Shown: positions 27,339 to 40,162, counted from the whole stretch's first letter. The stretch: 62,947 bases of DNA, filler included, from Octopus bimaculoides (GCF_001194135.2; 8 parts of 8 records of this genome joined end to end with filler, not necessarily neighbours in it); one strand, 5' to 3'. Numbers and translations: made by a program. The notes: a model not told the origin generated them from the sequence alone.

Positions 27339-28153
27339 GTATAAATGCTCACACGTGTTACTGACTCTTTTTATCTGCTGTATATAACGCATACACATAC
27401 ATGTATCACTCACACACACTCTTTTCTTTATACGACGGCCTGTCCTTTATTATGTTTTAATATGTCGCATTCACACTCACACACAGACATACATATCAAT
27501 GTCACAATAAATATTTCTGTTATTCATCTCATACGGTTGTCTTCTATCGTCTTCATTACTGGTATTTTCTAAATCACTATGTATAACATATTTCTAAATC
27601 ACTAAGTATAACATATTTATATATCATTTGATATAAATTTTGTGTTCGACCGCGTGACGCGTTTAAATAAAAGGAGTCCTGTGGTTTTCCATTCGTCACC
27701 ATTTCTCCTTTTTGGGTTCGCACGGTCGTTCTTACACATCTATATACACATGTAAATGTAAGTATATACATATATGTGTGTATACATGCATATATATATA
27801 TATATATATATATANNNNNNNNNNNNNNNNNNNNNNNNNNNNNNNNNNNNNNNNNNNNTTAATTAATTAANNNNNNNNNNNNNNNNNNNNNNNNNNNNNN
27901 NNNNNNNNNNNNNNATAAAAGTAAAAGAATATGTATATATTTTTGTTTTGGAGCACCGCCTTAAAGAGTGTTAGTCGAGCATATCGACCCCAGGACTTAT
28001 TCTTTGTAAGCCTAGTATTTATTTTATCGGTCTATTTTGCCGAACCGCTAAGTAACGGGGACATAAACACACCAGCGTCGGTTGTCAAGCACGACTAGCT
28101 GATGTATTATTTCTAATTTTTGTAATCAGTGAATGTGTTTCACTGAAATAGTA

Positions 28154-28292
28154 TATGTTTGCGAGAGTTTGACAAACTTTTTCAACCAGCTGGTCGTGCT
28201 ACTTCAGGCTGATGACGAGCAAAGACTCAGAAACATGTCTCTGAATGCAGGCTAGGCTGGGTGGAGGAGTTTGTCTCCCCCTCGCAAACATA
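28154..28292 (+). ncRNA. Minimal type-I hammerhead ribozyme on a long extended helix I
   Basis: Stem I TTCAGG/TCTGAA, core CTGATGA 28209-28215, stem II GAG/CTC, GAAA 28230-28233, palindromic ACATGT as stem III, GUC site with cleavage after 28239. 28154-28208 pairs with 28240-28292. Confidence 0.8.
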
Positions 28293-28769
28293 AGGACACA
28301 GGAAATGTGTCAAGGTCGACAGGAAGCGGTCAGCTTCCTAGGGCTAAATAGCAGTAGTATATTCCCTTATTGGGACTGTCTCGTTAAGTTGGCAGTATAC
28401 AAATATTCAATTCTGTTTTACAAGTATTCTTTAATACAAGAAGCATATTTTCTTCTCTTTCTTTTCTCACGTTAATATTCTTCTTTCTTTTTCTTTCTAT
28501 TCTGGTAAATCTAAGTCTCTTCTTTTTTGTTCGTGTATTCATTTATTCTCCACATTAACAGCAAATTTAAATTTATACATCCACCCACGCAACACATTAA
28601 TTCACTATCCTGAATTATTTAAAATCATAATTATATATTTATTTGTTTATTCATCTGTGGAAATCCTGGTCGAATATTCTGTAAAGAGTCATAATTCTAA
28701 AAACAAACTATTTAATCCCTTCTAATCCCCAACACTACTTAACAGAACCAAACAGACATACTCTTTTTT

Positions 28770-28990
28770 ACTCTTTTACTCTTCTACTTGTTTCAGTCAT
28801 TTGACTGCGGCCATGCTGGAGCACCGCCTTTAGTCGAGCAAATAGACCCCAGGACATATTCTTTGTAAGCCTAGTACTTATTCTATCGGTCTCTTTTGCC
28901 GAACCGCTAAGTTACGGGGACGTAAACACACCAACATCGGTTGTCAAGCGATGGTGGGGGTACAAACACAGACACACAAACACACATATA
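28770..28990 (-). mobile_element. SINE family A, 3' part
   Basis: cagtcatttgactgcggccatgctggagcaccgcc...gttgtcaagcgatgg. A similar fragment lies at 27950-28090. Confidence 0.85.
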
Positions 28991-29287
28991 TATATAGATA
29001 TATACAGCTTAGCGAAGAAAATAAAAATTAAATACTGGGGTCGATTCATTCGACTAAAGATTCAAGGCGGTGCCCCAGCATGGCCGCAATCTAATGACTG
29101 AGACAAGTAAAATTAATAAGATATTGACAAATAATGAAGTAGGATTGAACCCAGAGCAAGTATTATTTATATTGGCATAATAACACTCCCTAGAAACAGC
29201 AAAATTTGTTTCAATACACGAATTCACATAAAGAACCTTGCAAACTTAATGCAAAAACGAAATATTCGTAATAGTCATTTTATTTAC

Positions 29288-29495
29288 CTGCAACGGGCAC
29301 ATACTCGTTCTCTTCTGCGTGTTCACGAAGTGCCTCGATGGCTTCCTCCATTACGGGGAATGGCGACTGTCCAAAACCAAAAGCGTGAACTGACTTGCCA
29401 GCCTTTATCTGCTTTTTTATGTTTTGGTTTAGAATGACATTAGCTGCCATTCCAAAGTCCTGCAAGTGAGAACGGACCAATTCTACCTTGGACAT
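29288..29495 (-). CDS. First coding exon of a class I/II PLP-dependent aminotransferase (aspartate aminotransferase-like)
   Basis: Encodes MSKVELVRSHLQDFGMAANVILNQNIKKQIKAGKSVHAFGFGQSPFPVMEEAIEALREHAEENEYVPVAG, with family N-terminal motifs G(F)GQSPFP and Y.P..G. Acceptor (pyrimidine tract + CAG) at 29514 lies 18 nt before the ATG, and the phase-1 donor CAG|GTAAAT is at 29287. Confidence 0.85.
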
Positions 29496-29619
29496 TTTGG
29501 CTCGGCTATGGATCTGTTGAAAAAAAGAAAAGAAAAGGAATGTTTAGAAGAGGGACACGGTAAACAACAACAATAACAATAAAGAATAAATCGAAGGATC
29601 GATATTACGACAGGAGTTA

Positions 29620-29850: not shown

Positions 29851-30648
29851 ATCAAGAAGCTAACCCGGATTCAGTCCCACTGCATGGCACCTTGGGCAAT
29901 TGTCTTCTACCATAGACTCGGGTCGTCCAAAGCATTGTGAGNNNNNNNNNNNNNNNNNNNNNNNNNNNNNNNNNNNNNNNNNNNNNNNNNNNNNNNNNNN
30001 NNNNNNNNNNNNNNNNNNNNNNNNNNNNNNNNNNNNNNNNNNNNNNNNNNNNNNNNNNNNNNNNNNNNNNNNNNNNNNNNNNNNNNNNNNNNNNNNNNNN
30101 NNNNNNNNNNNNNNNNNNNNNNNNNNNNNNNNNNNNNNNNNNNNNNNNNNNNNNNNNNNNNNNNNNNNNNNNNNNNNNNNNNNNNNNNNNNNNNNNNNNN
30201 NNNNNNNNNNNNNNNNNNNNNNNNNNNNNNNNNNNNNNNNNNNNNNNNNNNNNNNNNNNNNNNNNNNNNNNNNNNNNNNNNNNNNNNNNNNNNNNNNNNN
30301 NNNNNNNNNNNNNNNNNNNNNNNNNNNNNNNNNNNNNNNNNNNNNNNNNNNNNNNNNNNNNNNNNNNNNNNNNNNNNNNNNNNNNNNNNNNNNNNNNNNN
30401 NNNNNNNNNNNNNNNNNNNNNNNNNNNNNNNNNNNNNNNNNNNNNNNNNNNNNNNNNNNNNNNNNNNNNNNNNNNNNNNNNNNNNNNNNNNNNNNNNNNN
30501 NNNNNNNNNNNNNNNNNNNNNNNNNNNNNNNNNNNNNNNNNNNNNNNNNNNNNNNNNNNNNNNNNNNNNNNNNNNNNNNNNNNNNNNNNNNNNNNNNNGT
30601 CCCTTCTAATTAAATAAATATTAAATTTACTTCAACGATTAAATGAAA

Positions 30649-31569: not shown

Positions 31570-33408
31570 ATTGTTTTGTCTTGTTTTGTCGTTTATCATA
31601 TCTTCGAAGCCGTTGGGCTTTCAGTTGTATTCGTTGTTTCAATTGTTCCTTGGTTGCAGGGAGGTTTATAAAATCTTTGATTTTTATGGTTTTTGCTTGA
31701 TTTTTCCTTGCTTGTTTCGTCTTAATATTTACTCCTAGCAAGTTCATCGAGAACTGTTACATCCGCCCGCAGTGATTCGATCTCTATTTGTATTGCTACT
31801 TTCCACTTAGGAAGTCTATGGACATGGTTGGGCCTTTTCCGTGTCATCCTGATACCTAGTTGAGCAGTTACAACTTTAGCAGTGGAACAAATGAGGTTAT
31901 TTAAGGTTGTTAGGTCATTTCCTTTATTTCTTAAGAACTGCCTAAGAGCAACATTATATATCATGATTATGCTACTTTTTATGCTGTTTGAGAACTTTGG
32001 TAGCGGTTCTCTATTGATCATGTCAGTAAACTTAGTCTTGCTGAGTTCTCTCACAATATCTTCTTTTACTTCTATGATCTTCTCTTTATTATTCATCTCA
32101 AATTCTGTGTCATACCTATTTTAGTGTTCTTGGGGTAGGCTTACTTTCTCCTCTTCTTCTGTTCTTTGCTATTCTTTCTTCAGCTTCCTCGTTGGTATAT
32201 ACTGCTCTTACACTGGGTTCTGTGCATCTGTTACCTATTTCATCTGCATTATTGCTGTTTTCATTTGGTCTACCATGAGATATTTGTGCCCTAATCTGGC
32301 TAATGTCAGTTAACCTTTTATTCTTAATGATGTCTCTGCGTACATTACTTAATTCATTTGCGTCTATATATCTGCGTACTTCGTTGCCTACTAAGTTTCT
32401 CCATGAAATGTTTGTACGATGAGGTTATTGTTTTGGGTTTAGTTGGGCTGTATAGGAAGCTTTCAACACATCTCTATAATCATCTCTAGTCCATTTTTAT
32501 GAATTTTGCTTTAGGTGGTGTTTTTGAGACTACAGGTCTAGGGTGAGGGTTATCCTGGTTCTGGTTACCTAGTAGATAGTTTTTTTTTTGCGAGTTTGTT
32601 TCAGTAGCAGACCTTTCGACCCCAGTCTTCTTCCCCACTGGGTAACGCAGTCCTTGTTGTCCCGGACGATGACCGATTCGGCATGAGTTTTGACTTGTCA
32701 TTAAAGCATTGACGGTAACAATAGGAGACGGGTCTGTTTGCTCAGGGTGATTTTTTGACATGACACCGCTTCCTGGTTGTTCGAATGAATATATTTGTCA
32801 TATCGTCGGCTGATAGATCGGAAATCGCCTCGATTTTTTTGGTAGCTATATTTCCGAGCATAACTGTTTAGTGATGTTTTAAACTGAGCGACTAACTTGC
32901 TCCTTTTTATATTCGTTTGTGGGAAGTCGTTTTGTTTTTGTTTGGTTCGGCGTCGTGTTTTTCTTTTCTTTTCTCTGTGTGTACGTGTGTGTCGTGTGGG
33001 CATTATTTATGTTGGTTATAAATATTAACATATTCACACGAATGCATGGATAGTTGCATGTATAGGTAATTATTCAATTTACATACTTACTGTGTGATTG
33101 GTGTGTTTTTCCAGGGTTCCTGGTGCTGGTTTCGACATTTTGCATATGTCACATTGAGATAACACGCATTTAGCAAAGAAGCTACACTTTATATAAAAAA
33201 AAAAATCTTTCCGATTTTTTAGTTCCTTTGCTTTAACAGAACTTTTCCCATAATTGTATTGCGAGGCTTTCCTTCCATTGCACCGATGTTATTGGATTAA
33301 ATTTGTTTAGTGTAGAGAGCTTCTTACTGTACGTCCATGTTGTTATTTAGTCCGGAGCTACTCCTGTTATTTAGTCCGGAGCTACTCCTGTTATTTAGCC
33401 CGGAGCTA
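31570..33408 (-). mobile_element. R4/Dong-like non-LTR retrotransposon, 5' part (5' UTR and broken N-terminal ORF)
   Basis: ORF 31722-32096 includes LTTLNNLICSTAKVVTAQLGI...LPKWKVAIQIEIESLRAD, typical of the R4/Dong N-terminal region. The 5' end carries three 24-bp repeats (33341-33408) and abuts (TTA)n. Confidence 0.65.
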
Positions 33409-33483: not shown

Positions 33484-33570
33484 TGTAGAAGTAGTAGTAG
33501 TAGTAGAAGTAGTAGTAGTAGTAGAAGTAGTAGTAGTATACATATGTGTGTGTGTGTGTGTGTGTGTGTT
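33409..33570. repeat. Compound microsatellite (TTA)n(AGT)n(GT)n
   Basis: Read directly from the sequence. Confidence 0.95.
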
Positions 33571-34548
33571 NNNNNNNNNNNNNNNNNNNNNNNNNNNNNN
33601 NNNNNNNNNNNNNNNNNNNNNNNNNNNNNNNNNNNNNNNNNNNNNNNNNNNNNNNNNNNNNNNNNNNNNNNNNNNNNNNNNNNNNNNNNNNNNNNNNNNN
33701 NNNNNNNNNNNNNNNNNNNNNNNNNNNNNNNNNNNNNNNNNNNNNNNNNNNNNNNNNNNNNNNNNNNNNNNNNNNNNNNNNNNNNNNNNNNNNNNNNNNN
33801 NNNNNNNNNNNNNNNNNNNNNNNNNNNNNNNNNNNNNNNNNNNNNNNNNNNNNNNNNNNNNNNNNNNNNNNNNNNNNNNNNNNNNNNNNNNNNNNNNNNN
33901 NNNNNNNNNNNNNNNNNNNNNNNNNNNNNNNNNNNNNNNNNNNNNNNNNNNNNNNNNNNNNNNNNNNNNNNNNNNNNNNNNNNNNNNNNNNNNNNNNNNN
34001 NNNNNNNNNNNNNNNNNNNNNNNNNNNNNNNNNNNNNNNNNNNNNNNNNNNNNNNNNNNNNNNNNNNNNNNNNNNNNNNNNNNNNNNNNNNNNNNNNNNN
34101 NNNNNNNNNNNNNNNNNNNNNNNNNNNNNNNNNNNNNNNNNNNNNNNNNNNNNNNNNNNNNNNNNNNNNNNNNNNNNNNNNNNNNNNNNNNNNNNNNNNN
34201 NNNNNNNNNNNNNNNNNNNNNNNNNNNNNNNNNNNNNNNNNNNNNNNNNNNNNNNNNNNNNNNNNNNNNNNNNNNNNNNNNNNNNNNNNNNNNNNNNNNN
34301 NNNNNNNNNNNNNNNNNNNNNNNNNNNNNNNNNNNNNNNNNNNNNNNNNNNNNNNNNNNNNNNNNNNNNNNNNNNNNNNNNNNNNNNNNNNNNNNNNNNN
34401 NNNNNNNNNNNNNNNNNNNNNNNNNTATTATTGTAGTTTCTCGTTTTGATCAATAAACTCCACCGTTTTATGTGCGTTGTATTTCGAAGCTTTGATCTTG
34501 TGCTCAACGTTCGGGATCATGTGGCTAACAATAGGGAAACCGGCACTC

Positions 34549-34807: not shown

Positions 34808-34817
34808 NNNNNNNNNN

Positions 34818-34851
<34 letters not shown>

Positions 34852-36021
34852 TATGTATGTGTGTGTGCGTACGTGCGCGCACGTGTCTGTGTCTGTATGT
34901 GTGCGTGTATGTATGAAGATTGTGTACAAATTGCATGTAAGCACAATTGTCTCCTTTATGTCTCCTTTATGTGCTTACATACACTTTGTCGCACACGAAT
35001 AAAAAACACATGAAGACACACGTTCATATATACACACTAATATTCGTAGAAGCATAGTCACTTACAGATGGGTAGACCACATGCAAACATTATGCACATA
35101 CATTACATATGTTCATAGATCGATGCAAATATATACACACAGACAGATACACAATCAAAGTTAAACTTTCTCTTATATTTCGTTCACTCAATACTGCTTG
35201 CATCTGTGAGTATCTATTCACAAACATACCTGCAGATATGTATGGATGTATACAAATATTCATGTATATATATAAATATATATACATGTAAGTGTGTTTG
35301 TTAGTTTGTTTGTTTGTTTGTATGCGCTCTCGCCTGTGTGCGGAGAGAGAATATACATGTAGGTAACCGTTTGTGTTTACAAGCGAAATAAAGGGAATTT
35401 TCTTTAGCAGAAAATGTAGACCTGTGTATTTTTTCTTTTACTAAAATAAAAGGCCCGGAATCATTCCAATGTTTTTAATGTTGCTGCTCTCTTCCCTACT
35501 TAACCATCCCTATCTTTTTTTCCTCCAATGATGGGCTAATATCCAAAACGTTAAGAAATACACTTTTTCCAAAGAAAAGTTAAGCGAATACATTATTTGT
35601 TAAACTTTGTTCTTCCTGTGTTGTTCTTACACTTTACATACATGTGTGTGTGTGTGTGTATGTGTGTTTACATGTATATATATGAATATAGATNNNNNNN
35701 NNNNNNNNNNNNNNNNNNNNNNNNNNNNNNNNNNNNNNNNNNNNNNNNNNNNNNNNNNNNNNNNNNNNNNNNNNNNNNNNNNNNNNNNNNNNNNNNNNNN
35801 NNNNNNNNNNNNNNNNNNNNNNNNNNNNNNNNNNNNNNNNNNNNNNNNNNNNNNNNNNNNNNNNNNNNNNNNNNNNNNNNNNNNNNNNNNNNNNNNNNNN
35901 NNNNNNNNNNNNNNNNNNNNNNNNNNNNNNNNNNNNNNNNNNNNNNNNNNNNNNNNNNNNNNNNNNNNNNNNNNNNNNNNNNNNNNNNNNNNNNNNNNNN
36001 NNNNNNNNNNNNNNNNNNNNN

Positions 36022-36053
<32 letters not shown>

Positions 36054-36444
36054 AGTGGTCAGATCATATGGAGGTCTACATTTAACATATTGGTTGTCCA
36101 CCTAGTGGCCATTCCTCTTATGTGTAATATAATTTTTCTGAATCTTCAGAATTTTAAAATATGCTAGACCACTGGTTTTAAATTGATATTAATCAAATTA
36201 ATATTCATTTTTTTTACCCTTATCATTTAAATATATATGTATATATACACTATGTATATACACACATAAACATATGTATGTGTGTAAGTATGTATATTAT
36301 GTATACATACATATTTACATACACACAGACATATTAATAAAGAGAATATAGACCCACCGTCTATGAACGGAAACGGAACTACCTGTTCATTGTATTGTAA
36401 TATTAGTGGCTGAGTGAACCCTTATCGTAATCCTCAGCTAGAGC

Positions 36445-37127: not shown

Positions 37128-37428
37128 NNNNNNNNNNNNNNNNNNNNNNNNNNNNNNNNNNNNNNNNNNNNNNNNNNNNNNNNNNNNNNNNNNNNNNNNN
37201 NNNNNNNNNNNNNNNNNNNNNNNNNNNNNNNNNNNNNNNNNNNNNNNNNNNNNNNNNNNNNNNNNNNNNNNNNNNNNNNNNNNNNNNNNNNNNNNNNNNN
37301 NNNNNNNNNNNNNNNNNNNNNNNNNNNNNNNNNNNNNNNNNNNNNNNNNNNNNNNNNNNNNNNNNNNNNNNNNNNNNNNNNNNNNNNNNNNNNNNNNNNN
37401 NNNNNNNNNNNNNNNNNNNNNNNNNNNN

Positions 37429-37809: not shown

Positions 37810-38600
37810 CCGGTGACTGTGGATGAGGATGAGTGACCTGAAGATAGAGACAGAAGCACTCATATGCGCAGCTCAGGAACAAGCGTTAAGGACCAGTTAT
37901 ATGAAGTGCAGAATAGACAACATTACCGATAGTGACAAATGCAGAATGTGTGGCGAGAGGGGTAAATCGGTATGGTACATCGTTAGCGAACGCCCGAAAC
38001 TGGCACAACGCGAATACAAAAGACGCCATTACAATGCGACAATAATAATCCATTGGGAGTTCTGTGGGAATCACGGCCTACGAAGAGAAAAGATGGGGTA
38101 TGAACAAACCCCAGAAGGAGTAACCGGAAATGTGAATTGCAGAATACTATGGGATGCAATGATCCAATGCGATCTCCTGACCAGACTTCGGAAACCGGAC
38201 ATTGTTGTGGTGAATAAAAAAGACAGAACGTGCATGATAACCGACATAGCACGCCCCGGCGAGAACAGGATTAATGTGAAAGAAGAAGAAAAAATAAACT
38301 ATGACGATTTGAAGTGGGAAATACGAAGGTTGTGGTCAATGAAGAGAGTAGACGTGGTACCAATAGTAATTGGTGCATTTGGAAGTATCAGCACTCAACT
38401 ACCAACATGGTTGAAAACGATCGGAGCAAGTGTGAAGGTAGAACAGCTACAAAAATAAGCATTGCTTAGAGCTGCAAGAATTCTTCGCAGGGTTTTTGAA
38501 GCATGACCAGTAAACAAGTGTCATCTTAATCTGTTGGTTGTGGACAGCAGAAACTTTCTATCATACCCAGCAAAATAAGCTGTGAGTTTTCATATTATAT
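37810..38600 (+). mobile_element. R4/Dong-like LINE 3' end: zinc knuckle plus restriction-like endonuclease, 5'-truncated
   Basis: ORF 37823-38458 has ETEALICAAQEQALRT, CRMCGE..(E)SVWYIVS, PDIVV, D...P, KEEEK and VPIVIGAFGS motifs. The second knuckle Cys is substituted. Confidence 0.88.
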
Positions 38601-39339
38601 ATATATATATATATNNNNNNNNNNNNNNNNNNNNNNNNNNNNNNNNNNNNNNNNNNNNNNNNNNNNNNNNNNNNNNNNNNNNNNNNNNNNNNNNNNNNNN
38701 NNNNNNNNNNNNNNNNNNNNNNNNNNNNNNNNNNNNNNNNNNNNNNNNNNNNNNNNNNNNNNNNNNNNNNNNNNNNNNNNNNNNNNNNNNNNNNNNNNNN
38801 NNNNNNNNNNNNNNNNNNNNNNNNNNNNNNNNNNNNNNNNNNNNNNNNNNNNNNNNNNNNNNNNNNNNNNNNNNNNNNNNNNNNNNNNNNNNNNNNNNNN
38901 NNNNNNNNNNNNNNNNNNNNNNNNNNNNNNNNNNNNNNNNNNNNNNNNNNNNNNNNNNNNNNNNNNNNNNNNNNNNNNNNNNNNNNNNNNNNNNNNNNNN
39001 NNNNNNNNNNNNNNNNNNNNNNNNNNNNNNNNNNNNNNNNNNNNNNNNNNNNNNNNNNNNNNNNNNNNNNNNNNNNNNNNNNNNNNNNNNNNNNNNNNNN
39101 NNNNNNNNNNNNNNNNNNNNNNNNNNNNNNNNNNNNNNNNNNNNNNNNNNNNNNNNNNNNNNNNNNNNNNNNNNNNNNNNNNNNNNNNNNNNNNNNNNNN
39201 NNNNNNNNNNNNNNNNNNNNNNNNNNNNNNNNNNNNNNNNNNNNNNNNNNNNNNNNNNNNNNNNNNNNNNNNNNNNNNNNNNNNNNNNNNNNNNNNNNNN
39301 NNNNNNNNNNNNNNNNNNNNNNNNNNNNNNNNNNNNNNN

Positions 39340-39490
39340 CTCTCCCAAAAAAAGAAAAACAAAGCAAAAGACGAAGACAGGTGTGTAAACAACAAACAGA
39401 TGTATTAGTTTAACGCTGGAGAAGTGAGAAAGTATTTTACGTTTCGAACCTACGCTCTTCAACAGAAAGGAACACAGAAATAAGCAGAGA
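39340..39490 (-). mobile_element. Dispersed repeat family D (Penelope-like pseudo-LTR?) with hammerhead-like core; other copies at 44281-44400 (+), 44790-44925 (-), 46370-46530 (+), partial 23890-23945 (-)
   Basis: Shared block ttctgtNgaagagcgtRRRYtcgaaac...gagcgt...ctaatacatc...ttgttgtttacac. Confidence 0.6.
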
Positions 39491-39871
39491 GAGAAAATAA
39501 TATATATATATATATAACGGTATCGATTAAATTGTCGATTACTGCTGTATATCGCTGGTCACAGTGTGCTTCGCGTTGTTTTAGCTTCCAAATGATGTGA
39601 CGCCGCTGGCTTGGAGGGCAGGCAGACGTTCCACTTCAACGGAACGCAAGTCTGTCGCAAAGTAACCCATTTACGGGTAAGTTGACGGGAGCAACGTGAA
39701 AAGAAGTGTTTTGCTGTAGAACGCAACACGCAGCCGGCCTGGGAATCGAAATCACGACCATGTAAGTGCAACACTGTAACCACTTGGCCAACGCCTTCAT
39801 GTATGTGTATGTGTGTGTGTGTATGTGCGTGCTTCTGTGTGTGCATGTGTTAATATATATATATACATGCC

Positions 39872-39913
<42 letters not shown>

Positions 39914-40162
39914 AATCTGCTGCAGCGTAAGAAAGCATTCAAACTCATAAAAATGTTGTTTTTTAAATGTTTGCAGACATAGGCCACCGTCGGTTATTTT
40001 ATTATATTTTCTCTTTGCCTCTACAAACATGGAAAACCCAGGCAATAATTTACTCAGCAAAANNNNNNNNNNNNNNNNNNNNNNNNNNNNNNNNNNNNNN
40101 NNNNNNTTAATTAATTAANNNNNNNNNNNNNNNNNNNNNNNNNNNNNNNNNNNNNNNNNNNN

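What the first reader, a model, noticed from the sequence alone, without database searches (positions are those of the whole stretch)
28090..28410. Hammerhead ribozyme on a ~45-bp G-U-rich helix: retrozyme-like unit
Seen: on the + strand, the catalytic core CUGAUGA...GAAA with a GUC site is intact. Stem I is 6 bp, stem II is 3 bp with a C-A mismatch at its base, and stem III is the palindrome ACAUGU. Stem I continues as a long imperfect helix (28154-28208 with 28240-28292). By hand I count about 41 Watson-Crick and 6 G-U pairs, ending in the perfect 12-mer TATGTTTGCGAG/CTCGCAAACATA. G-U pairs work on only one strand, which suggests selection on RNA structure. Three more hairpins flank it: CAGTGAA/TTCACTG (28127-28145), GACACA-GGAAA-TGTGTC (28295-28311) and AGGAAGC/GCTTCCT (28321-28339). 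Known: minimal type-I hammerheads with palindromic stem III act as dimers in Penelope-like elements, and 170-400-nt non-LTR retrozymes that make circular RNAs occur in metazoans including molluscs. Inference: this is a monomer of a cephalopod retrozyme or PLE-related self-cleaving RNA family, possibly uncatalogued. It lies antisense to the aminotransferase intron, so it would not cut that pre-mRNA.
Basis: partly seen in the sequence, partly recalled or inferred. Interest (0 to 1): 0.88.

Follow-up and report, generated by a model that had tools for sequence, protein, structure and literature searches.

The report
Solo copy of hammerhead-bearing octopus repeat
The hammerhead ribozyme motif is real, but it sits in one truncated, apparently silent copy of a roughly 350-base repeat present in thousands of copies, which makes it a new cephalopod example of a known class of ribozyme-carrying mobile elements (retrozyme or Penelope-associated).

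Summary
28203-28245 (+) has every catalytic nucleotide of a type-I hammerhead (HHR). It caps a helix of about 45 bp (about 40 Watson-Crick, 6 G-U pairs). A structural descriptor matched only this site and nothing in 2000 random 12-kb pieces.

It is not a single-copy oddity. 28102-28402 is a dispersed repeat of roughly 10^3-10^4 copies in the source organism and in three related species.

Across copies the 13 catalytic nucleotides never vary at 3% or more, while 32 of the 81 neighbouring sites do (p=0.004). Helix I, the long helix and the helix III palindrome change at matching frequencies that keep pairing. The C/A opposition at the base of helix II is the family consensus, not decay.

Read and contig overhangs link the family's 3' end through about 48 nt back to its 5' end. 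That gives a head-to-tail unit of about 349 nt, as in metazoan non-LTR retrozymes. Many other copies are solo and end in AT-rich or (TA)n DNA.

The window copy is solo, covers 301 of about 349 nt, has no partner hammerhead, and shows no RNA reads in its unique flank. Rfam does not detect the motif. RNA-seq shows no cleavage ends or circular joints. Cleavage, circular RNA and mobilisation by Penelope-like elements remain inferences.

Verdict: new member of a known kind, of moderate interest.

The parts
28102..28402 (+). Solo, partial (301 of about 349 nt) copy of a high-copy dispersed or tandem repeat family that carries the hammerhead.
   Evidence: DNA read and contig depth is 10^2-10^5 times that of the unique flank and drops to single-copy or zero after 28402-28407 and before 28100-28102. 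GC is 0.43. Stop codons occur in all six frames.
28203..28245 (+). Minimal type-I hammerhead motif: helix I 28203-08/28240-45; C3-A9 28209-15; helix II 28217-19/28226-28 with loop 28220-25 and unpaired C28216/A28229; G12-A14 28230-32; palindromic helix III A15.1-U16.1 28233-38; C17 28239. The predicted cut is between 28239 and 28240.
   Evidence: Sequence. Descriptor scan. No variant at 3% or more at any of the 13 catalytic positions among about 2500 laid DNA reads (Fisher p=0.0037).
28154..28199 (+). 5' arm of the long extension of helix I. This is the fast-evolving half of the element.
   Evidence: Fold. Family variants at 28161, 28176, 28178 and 28191 are matched by complementary variants in the 3' arm.
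28247..28292 (+). 3' arm of the long extension of helix I.
   Evidence: Fold. Variants at 28285, 28270, 28268, 28254 and 28249 occur at frequencies matching those of their partners.
28200..28202 (+). UAC side of a 3x1 internal loop (opposite U28246), 6 bp from the core. This is the position where a loop 1 contact with loop 2 would be expected.
   Evidence: Fold. No variant at 3% or more at 28200-02 or 28246. The tertiary contact itself is an inference.
28126..28146 (+). Hairpin UCAGUGAA / UUCACUGA.
   Evidence: Fold. The frequent family variant 28137 lies in the loop. 28126 T>C is matched by 28146 A>G in some reads.
28295..28311 (+). Hairpin GACACA-GGAAA-UGUGUC. This is the most abundant segment of the family.
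   Evidence: Fold. Highest read depth.
28321..28339 (+). Hairpin AGGAAGC / GCUUCCU.
   Evidence: Fold. The common 1-nt insertion after 28330 (34% of reads) and the 28332 variant fall in its loop.
28091..28101 (.). 11 nt (ACGACTAGCTG) between the truncated SINE and the element. It matches neither family and may be filler from insertion.
   Evidence: Depth is near zero at 28094-28099. SINE overhangs diverge after 28090.

Best explanation
Window 28102-28402 is one dead-end insertion of a non-coding, highly structured repeat of about 349 nt found in octopod genomes. The repeat carries a minimal type-I hammerhead ribozyme at the tip of a long helix. It is best filed as a non-LTR retrozyme-type element, that is, a non-autonomous relative of the terminal repeats of Penelope-like elements (PLEs).

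Proposed mechanism:
1. Head-to-tail copies are transcribed on the + strand.
2. A single motif cannot form helix III, because ACAUGU has no loop. Two motifs, from neighbouring units or from two RNAs, pair their palindromes into a 6-bp helix III. This forms a double hammerhead that cuts after C17.
3. [quoted passage not shown]
4. A PLE-type reverse transcriptase/endonuclease copies the RNA into AT-rich or (TA)n DNA. This yields tandem copies and many solo copies.

Shown here: the motif, the family's abundance in four species, invariance of the catalytic nucleotides, pair-preserving variation, the head-to-tail closure, AT-rich 3' junctions, and family RNA being present.

Inferred: dimeric cleavage, circular RNA and the PLE partner.

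The window copy itself is a lone truncated monomer lying antisense in an intron, and is most likely inert.
For: Repeat family:
- Contig k-mer depth is 1e5-7e5 over 28190-28405, against about 5-50 in the unique flank, in organism A and related species B-D.
- Raw DNA reads give a depth of about 2500 at the core from 1.9 Gb read.

Constraint on the hammerhead (unless noted):
- Within 28209-28239 the only variants at 3% or more are CpG decay at 28216/17, loop 2 positions 28223/24, and 28235 A>T (4.5%) together with 28236 T>A (4.6%). That pair turns ACAUGU into ACUAGU and keeps the palindrome.
- None of the 13 catalytic positions is variable, against 32 of 81 other sites (p=0.0037).
- In species B and D, C17 varies only to U, which the NUH rule allows.

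Pair-preserving change (partners, frequencies):
- 28204 U>C 34% with 28244 A>G 38%.
- 28208 G>A 33% with 28240 U>C 59%.
- 28176 A>G 53% with 28270 U>C 73%.
- 28178 U>A 56% with 28268 A>U 51%.
- 28161 G>A 48% with 28285 C>U 46%.
- 28191 U>A 31% with 28254 A>U 38%.
- In species B and C, 28197 U>A 37-77% with 28249 A>U 56-79%.
- G-U pairs make the + strand 23 kcal/mol more stable than the - strand.

Head-to-tail unit:
- The overhang after 28402 reads CTACTTTATCGCATCACTACTGCTTAAGTC (375+287 reads).
- The overhang before 28102 reads TCTGCTTAAGTCTCTCTGAGAGATTTAGAA (13 contigs in B; shorter versions in A).
- One contig of species C bridges the two: CACTACTGCTTAAATCTCATTGAGAGATTT.

Other family traits:
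- Solo copies end ...CTACTTTAT followed by unrelated AT-rich or (TA)n sequence.
- The reconstructed circle folds at -124.5 kcal/mol, z -7.4.
- GC is 0.43, there is no ORF and no tRNA head.

Literature match:
- Retrozymes are 150-450 bp tandem units with a type-I HHR, low GC and self-paired RNA; the mussel units are 350-390 bp (PMC7229834).
- Minimal HHRs lacking helix III occur dispersed in thousands of copies and act as dimers (PMC4209133, PMC7761336).
- Retrozymes derive from PLE pLTRs (bioRxiv 10.64898/2026.07.22.740005).
- PLEs have been active in octopus (PMC13282606).
Against: - No 150-nt read was reported that joins 28402 to 28102 directly. The closure rests on overlapping consensus overhangs plus one bridging contig.
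- Depth falls about 60-fold from 28300 to 28103. This could mean 5' truncation of a longer element. At least part of it is divergence of the 5' arm, because the overhangs there are recognisably homologous.
- RNA-seq shows no pile-up of ends at 28239/40, no back-joints, and only modest depth of about 140, against about 1380 for the neighbouring SINE. The libraries are unstranded and only about 6% of each was read.
- Rfam hammerhead models give no hit.
- Helix II has only 3 bp, with a conserved C/A opposition where G10.1-C11.1 normally sits. This may cripple catalysis.
- No PLE ORF could be linked to the family.
- At this locus there is a single unit, with no tandem and no second hammerhead in 12 kb.
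Confidence: 0.62

Rival explanations
1. The copy is the 5'-truncated terminal (pseudo-LTR) piece of an autonomous Penelope-like element rather than a short non-autonomous unit. The hammerhead is the usual PLE minimal HHR near the element's 3' end, and the optional sequence after 28402 is the PLE 'tail' or the next tandem unit.
For: The depth gradient rises towards the 3' end. The 3' ends are fixed and sit in AT-rich or (TA)n DNA, and a fraction of copies carry an optional extension. That resembles the PLE tail and its target bias (PMC8557442, PMC11167929). All canonical PLEs carry HHRs in their pLTRs (PMC4209133). PLEs are abundant in octopus (PMC13282606).
Against: The 3' overhang leads back to the 5' end of the same 301 nt after only about 48 nt. 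That fits a unit of about 349 nt, not one of several kb. No RT or GIY-YIG ORF lies nearby. High-frequency variants show no third-codon-position bias in the only longish frame, and a 1-nt indel is present in 34% of copies. Helix II is short and helix I very long, the opposite of the published PLE min-HHRs.
Confidence: 0.22
2. The block is hammerhead-derived but no longer catalytic. It is conserved because the folded RNA (long helix plus apical loop) serves another step, for example recognition by the reverse transcriptase or RNA stability.
For: The C28216/A28229 opposition is conserved at the position of the nearly universal G10.1-C11.1 pair (PMC4209133). There are no cleavage-site read ends in RNA-seq. 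PLE HHR catalytic mutants still support insertion in vitro (PMC11167929). PLE min-HHRs cleave poorly in vitro (PMC4209133).
Against: The pattern of constraint is specific to a hammerhead: all 13 catalytic nucleotides are invariant, position 17 varies only C/U, helix III changes keep the palindrome, and helix I changes at matching frequencies that keep pairing. A natural retrozyme HHR with a U-U mismatch at the base of helix II exists in axolotl (PMC7229834).
Confidence: 0.12
3. This is a chance hammerhead-like string in the loop of a foldback or MITE-type inverted repeat, with no RNA function.
For: Both strands fold significantly better than shuffles. Rfam gives no hit.
Against: The descriptor gave 0 hits in 2000 random pieces. 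The core is invariant across thousands of copies and four species while its flanks vary. G-U pairs and one-sided changes favour the + strand only.
Confidence: 0.03

Closest known systems
Metazoan non-LTR retrozymes (Cervera & de la Pena 2020, PMC7229834), e.g. the 350-390 bp units of the mussel Mytilus galloprovincialis
   Same: Non-coding unit of about 350 nt with one type-I hammerhead per unit. GC below 50%. Head-to-tail closure. Thousands of copies. The predicted RNA is highly self-paired. Helix I is 6 bp next to the core. A weak helix III implies action as a dimer. A mismatch at the base of helix II is also known in axolotl HHR_Amex2.
   Different: Helix III here has no loop at all, only the palindrome. 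Helix II is 3 bp. Helix I continues into a helix of about 40 bp instead of ending in loop 1. Tandem arrays are inferred, not seen directly. No circular RNA has been shown. Most distinct loci look like solo copies in AT-rich DNA.
Minimal hammerheads of Penelope-like elements (Cervera & de la Pena 2014, PMC4209133; Lunse et al. 2017, known here only as cited in PMC7761336)
   Same: There is no helix III beyond a palindrome at 15.2-16.2. An unpaired nucleotide follows A9. If C28216 is read as that bulge, G-C is the first pair of helix II. The motifs are dispersed in thousands of copies per genome, vary within a genome in ways that keep pairing, and are expected to act only as dimers.
   Different: Published PLE min-HHRs have a long helix II (6-8 bp) and a short helix I (4-5 bp), which is reversed here. 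There is an extra A28229 before G12. No RT/GIY-YIG ORF or pLTR context was found.
Double-hammerhead satellites and viroids (newt satellite 2, ASBVd; Forster et al. 1988 as cited in PMC4209133)
   Same: A single motif is inactive because helix III is too weak. Two motifs pair to build a stable helix III.
   Different: Those have a 1-2 bp stem plus a small loop. This is a different host lineage with no sequence similarity.
Rfam Hammerhead_1 (RF00163)
   Same: Same catalytic core and type-I topology.
   Different: The covariance model does not score this sequence at all.

Membership tests
Hammerhead ribozyme (type I) | Catalytic core C3 U4 G5 A6 N7 G8 A9 / G12 A13 A14 / A15.1-U16.1 / H17 | tested here: met
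   All are present at 28209-15, 28230-33 and 28238-39. They are invariant at the 3% level among about 2500 DNA reads.
Hammerhead ribozyme (type I) | Helix I closing the core with open 5'/3' ends | tested here: met
   6 bp at 28203-08/28240-45, extended by about 40 bp. Variant frequencies match at 28204/28244 and 28208/28240.
Hammerhead ribozyme (type I) | Helix II with a G10.1-C11.1 (R-Y) base pair | tested here: inconclusive
   Only GAG/CUC (3 bp). C28216 and A28229 are unpaired, and this is the family consensus. If C28216 is read as a bulge, G-C is the first pair, but A28229 is then an extra nucleotide before G12.
Hammerhead ribozyme (type I) | Helix III hairpin within a single motif | tested here: not met
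   ACAUGU has no loop, so it can pair only between two motifs. The cofold forms the 6-bp duplex.
Hammerhead ribozyme (type I) | Match to the curated Rfam covariance models | tested here: not met
   No hammerhead family at E<=10, either on 12 kb or on 211 nt.
Hammerhead ribozyme (type I) | Site-specific self-cleavage after position 17 | not testable with these tools
   RNA-seq shows no excess of read ends at 28239/40. Ligated circles or uncleaved monomers would look the same.
PLE-type minimal hammerhead | No helix III except palindromic 15.2-16.2 | tested here: met
   ACAUGU. The variant ACUAGU keeps the palindrome.
PLE-type minimal hammerhead | Unpaired nucleotide between A9 and 10.1 | tested here: met
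   C28216. This feature is listed in PMC4209133.
PLE-type minimal hammerhead | Long helix II (6-8 bp) and short helix I (4-5 bp) | tested here: not met
   Helix II is 3 bp. Helix I is 6 bp plus about 40 bp.
Penelope-like element | RT plus GIY-YIG ORF flanked by pseudo-LTRs carrying the hammerhead | tested here: not met
   There is no such ORF within 12 kb. Neighbouring ORFs have no Pfam RT or GIY-YIG match. Only one hammerhead is present. For the family as a whole this was not testable, because no eukaryotic genome collection was available.
Non-LTR retrozyme | Short (150-450 bp) head-to-tail repeats, one type-I HHR per unit | tested here: inconclusive
   Family: overlapping overhangs and one bridging contig give a unit of about 349 nt, but no direct back-joint was seen in 150-nt reads. 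This locus holds a single partial unit.
Non-LTR retrozyme | Non-coding, no LTR/PBS/PPT, GC below 50% | tested here: met
   Stops in all frames. GC 0.43. No direct terminal repeats.
Non-LTR retrozyme | Stable, highly self-paired unit RNA | tested here: met
   -115.7 kcal/mol, z -6.0 for the linear copy. -124.5 kcal/mol, z -7.4 for the reconstructed circle.
Non-LTR retrozyme | Accumulation as small circular RNA | not testable with these tools
   Only unstranded short-read cDNA libraries were available. No long-read runs could be listed.
tRNA-derived SINE | Pol III tRNA-like head | tested here: not met
   ARAGORN found none. Rfam gave no tRNA, 5S or 7SL hit.

The most novel reading that the evidence does not exclude
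The family is a currently active, circular-RNA-producing retrozyme of octopods. It uses an unusual hammerhead architecture: a conserved 1x1 C/A loop at the base of a 3-bp helix II, no helix III, and helix I fused to a helix of about 45 bp. It cleaves only as an intermolecular or tandem dimer. Subfamily frequencies differ strongly among the four species examined, for example 28280 C>T at 0.7% in A against 69%, 89% and 45% in B, C and D. That would then reflect independent recent amplification in each lineage.
Probability: 0.3. Interest if true: 0.55.

Novelty: new member of a known kind. Interest (0 to 1): 0.36.

Why it matters
This would extend ribozyme-bearing retroelements (retrozymes and PLE minimal hammerheads) to cephalopods, where the searchable literature describes none.

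It shows that standard Rfam scans miss a family of thousands of copies. The giant-squid genome paper reports only Rfam Hammerhead_1 hits.

It gives a natural test case for how much deviation the base of helix II tolerates, because the C/A opposition is conserved across the family.

For annotation, it explains a strongly structured element in an intron as a repeat, not a locus-specific regulatory RNA.

If circular RNAs are made, they would be a class of abundant non-coding RNA not yet described in octopus tissues.

Tried and rejected
- Rfam at permissive thresholds on 12 kb and on 211 nt gave no hammerhead. The only hits were sub-threshold miRNA models on (TG)n and (TA)n microsatellites, which are chance matches.
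- I tried to fetch real copies through the protein collections. The exact 76-aa ORF is not on record. The 52-aa in-element translation has no homologue. No aligned set of copies could therefore be built, and no R-scape-type test was possible. All covariation statements rest on matching site frequencies, not on linked reads.
- I considered that the AUG inside CUGAUGA starts a PLE ORF, as in the Anolis Poseidon element (PMC11167929). I rejected this. The frame is closed in this copy, high-frequency variants show no third-position bias (6 of 16), and 34% of copies carry a 1-nt insertion.
- No long-read runs could be listed to see arrays directly.
- I tested whether the insertion is shared with species B-D. 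No contig of B-D spans the 3' junction at 85% identity or more, so age and orthology cannot be told.
- The exon's aminotransferase identity was not confirmed by Pfam or PDB. Only its motif pattern, from my own knowledge, suggests a class I/II aminotransferase.
- Searches for a second copy or for the closure sequence within the window found nothing.
- The 100%-complementary 348-nt 'inverted repeats' lie where runs of N stand in the assembly, so they are artefacts.

Full report
**1. The observation**

Helix I is UUCAGG (28203-08) with UCUGAA (28240-45). CUGAUGA is 28209-15. Helix II is the 3-bp GAG/CUC (28217-19/28226-28), with C28216 opposite A28229. GAAA is 28230-33. The loop-less palindrome ACAUGU is 28233-38, and C17 is 28239.

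The minimum-free-energy fold of the + strand extends helix I by 40 further pairs (35 Watson-Crick, 5 G-U) between 28154-28199 and 28247-28292. It also contains the three flanking hairpins. The + strand folds at -115.7 kcal/mol (z -6.0) and the - strand at -92.2 (z -5.1).

The bare core string is expected 0.04 times per window. A full structural descriptor matched only this site in the 12-kb piece and nothing in 2000 random pieces.

Against this, no Rfam hammerhead model scores the region, even at E<=10 on 211 nt. In this copy's own fold the apical loop pairs differently from the active hammerhead.

**2. It is a repeat, not a locus-specific RNA**

I laid genomic contigs of the source organism (coded A) and three related species (B-D) on the region.
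- 28190-28405 has a summed k-mer depth of 1e5-7e5.
- 28094-28189 has a few thousand.
- The flank beyond 28406 has about 5-50.

Raw genomic reads gave a depth of about 2500 over the core and about 4200 at 28290-28322. These came from 1.9 Gb read out of 128 Gb. That is a few thousand copies if the genome is 2-3 Gb, which is my assumption. The contig depths suggest more.

The boundaries of the window copy are 28102 and 28402. Immediately upstream lies a far more abundant SINE, truncated at 28090, and then 11 nt of unassigned sequence.

**3. Constraint on the hammerhead across the family**

Among the laid reads (3% threshold), the 31 nt from C3 to C17 vary only at these positions:
- 28216 C>T and 28217 G>A, which is decay of a CpG.
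- 28223/28224, in loop 2.
- 28235 A>T (4.5%) together with 28236 T>A (4.6%). This converts ACAUGU to ACUAGU and keeps the palindrome.

None of the 13 catalytic positions is variable, against 32 of the 81 other positions in 28197-28290 (Fisher p=0.0037). In species B and D, C17 also appears as U at about 24%, which the NUH rule allows. The UAC/U internal loop 6 bp from the core is invariant too.

A28229 and C28216 are the family consensus. The odd base of helix II is therefore a family trait, not damage to this copy. A U-U mismatch at the same place is known in an axolotl retrozyme hammerhead (PMC7229834).

**4. Pair-preserving variation**

I took pairing partners from the fold and variant frequencies from raw reads.

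| 5' site | change | freq | 3' site | change | freq |
|---|---|---|---|---|---|
| 28204 | U>C | 34% | 28244 | A>G | 38% |
| 28208 | G>A | 33% | 28240 | U>C | 59% |
| 28176 | A>G | 53% | 28270 | U>C | 73% |
| 28178 | U>A | 56% | 28268 | A>U | 51% |
| 28161 | G>A | 48% | 28285 | C>U | 46% |
| 28191 | U>A | 31% | 28254 | A>U | 38% |

For 28208/28240, the family is mostly G-C or A-U, and the window copy has G-U.

In species B and C, 28197 U>A (37-77%) matches 28249 A>U (56-79%). One-sided changes keep pairing: 28175 A>G gives G-U, 28180 U>C gives C-G, and 28192 G>A gives A-U. An alternative 5' arm seen in overhangs (GACAGGCAUCUUC) is fully complementary, with G-U pairs, to an alternative 3' arm (GGAGGUGCUUGUC).

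I could not obtain linked sequences of individual copies. These are matched frequencies, not proven co-occurrence.

**5. Unit structure**

Reads that reach 28402 mostly continue as CTACTTTATCGCATCACTACTGCTTAAGTC (375 and 287 reads). Contigs that start at 28102 are preceded by TCTGCTTAAGTCTCTCTGAGAGATTTAGAA (13 contigs in species B; shorter versions in A). The two consensus sequences overlap by 11 nt. One contig of species C bridges them: CACTACTGCTTAAATCTCATTGAGAGATTT.

The family therefore closes on itself after about 48 nt, giving a unit of about 349 nt arranged head to tail or circularly permuted.

Many distinct loci instead end ...GCAGTATAACTACTTTAT followed by unrelated AT-rich or (TA)n sequence. 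These are solo insertions.

The reconstructed circle folds at -124.5 kcal/mol (z -7.4). GC is 0.43, all frames are closed, and there is no tRNA-like head.

Two caveats:
- No 150-nt read joining 28402 to 28102 directly was reported.
- Depth falls about 60-fold towards the 5' end. Part of this is divergence of the 5' arm, because the overhangs there are recognisably homologous. Part may be truncation.

**6. RNA**

Three 2026 RNA-seq runs of organism A show family reads at a depth of about 140, against about 1380 for the adjacent SINE. They show no pile-up of ends at 28239/40 and no back-joints.

The libraries are unstranded, as the neighbouring expressed exon shows, so the equal strand counts carry no information. 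The unique flank 28410-28460 has zero reads, so this copy shows no detectable transcription.

This neither supports nor excludes cleavage followed by ligation.

**7. What it is and how it most likely works**

The anatomy matches metazoan non-LTR retrozymes: 150-450-bp tandem units, a type-I hammerhead, low GC, self-paired RNA, and 350-390 bp in a mussel (PMC7229834, PMC7761336). It also matches the minimal hammerheads lacking helix III that are dispersed in thousands of copies and sometimes sit in PLE pseudo-LTRs (PMC4209133). A 2026 preprint derives retrozymes from PLE pLTRs (10.64898/2026.07.22.740005), and PLEs have been active in octopus (PMC13282606).

The most likely mechanism has four steps:
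1. Head-to-tail units are transcribed.
2. Two palindromes pair into a 6-bp helix III, which the cofold forms.
3. Each hammerhead cuts after C17.
4. The unit RNA is circularised by a host ligase and reverse-transcribed by a PLE enzyme into AT-rich DNA.

Steps 2 to 4 are inference.

The main rival is a truncated pLTR of an autonomous PLE. The 349-nt closure and the lack of any coding signal disfavour it, but I could not inspect full-length octopus PLEs. A catalytically dead but structurally conserved motif remains possible because of the helix II anomaly.

**8. Verdict**

The window copy is a solo monomer of 301 of about 349 nt, antisense in an intron of an expressed gene, and most likely inert.

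It is a new member of a known kind, with some architectural peculiarities: a 3-bp helix II with a conserved C/A opposition, and helix I fused to a helix of about 45 bp. No octopus hammerhead description was found in the searchable literature. The giant squid genome paper lists only Rfam Hammerhead_1 hits (PMC6962438).

Interest is moderate, about 0.36.

Noticed in passing
window 27971-28090 and 28830-28949 (extending to about 29000): Two copies (92% alike) of a hyper-abundant SINE-like repeat, with k-mer depth 1e6-1e7, about 30 times that of the hammerhead family. The first copy is cut off at 28090, exactly where the hammerhead element and 11 nt of filler begin. The second runs into a (CA)n/(TA)n tail.
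   Followed up: partly
window 29351-29352 (coding exon on the - strand): In one RNA run (X39), 8/10 and 6/10 reads of one orientation class show T>C on the + strand, which is A>G in the mRNA. By my reading of the frame this changes GTA to GTG (silent) and ATG to GTG (Met to Val). It could be A-to-I editing or a polymorphism. It was not seen in X38; X40 had no reads there.
   Followed up: no
window 29280-29512 (- strand): An expressed exon with a start-codon ORF (MSKVELVRSH...FGFGQSPFPV...) and a GT donor at 29279. RNA reads carry a spliced upstream-exon overhang beyond 29513. The aminotransferase identity was not confirmed by Pfam or PDB.
   Followed up: partly
window 29198-29245: A small pile of RNA reads (depth up to about 22, mostly only partly aligned) in the intron, between the exon and the second SINE. 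It could be a repeat or a short unannotated exon.
   Followed up: no
window 37823-38458 (+) and 31722-32096 (-): ORFs of 211 and 124 aa that look like retrotransposon remnants; the first has a CxxC...H motif typical of LINE C-termini, from my own knowledge. Neither has a Pfam match. Neither is adjacent to the hammerhead element.
   Followed up: partly
window 34813-34917, 36232-36339, 39794-39916: Sub-threshold Rfam hits to mir-466, mir-297, mir-3149 and similar models. All fall on (TG)n/(CA)n/(TA)n microsatellites and are chance matches.
   Followed up: yes
window 29937-30600, 33570-34430, 35694-36045, 37130-37400, 38596-39360: Long runs of N (assembly gaps) in the piece. They produce the 100%-complementary 'inverted repeats' and the X-filled ORFs.
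   Followed up: yes
window 28240-28290, compared across species A-D: Subfamily composition of the repeat differs sharply between species. For example, 28280 C>T is at 0.7% in A, 69% in B, 89% in C and 45% in D; 28251 G>A is at 4%, 62%, 89% and 58%. This suggests lineage-specific amplification after the species split.
   Followed up: partly
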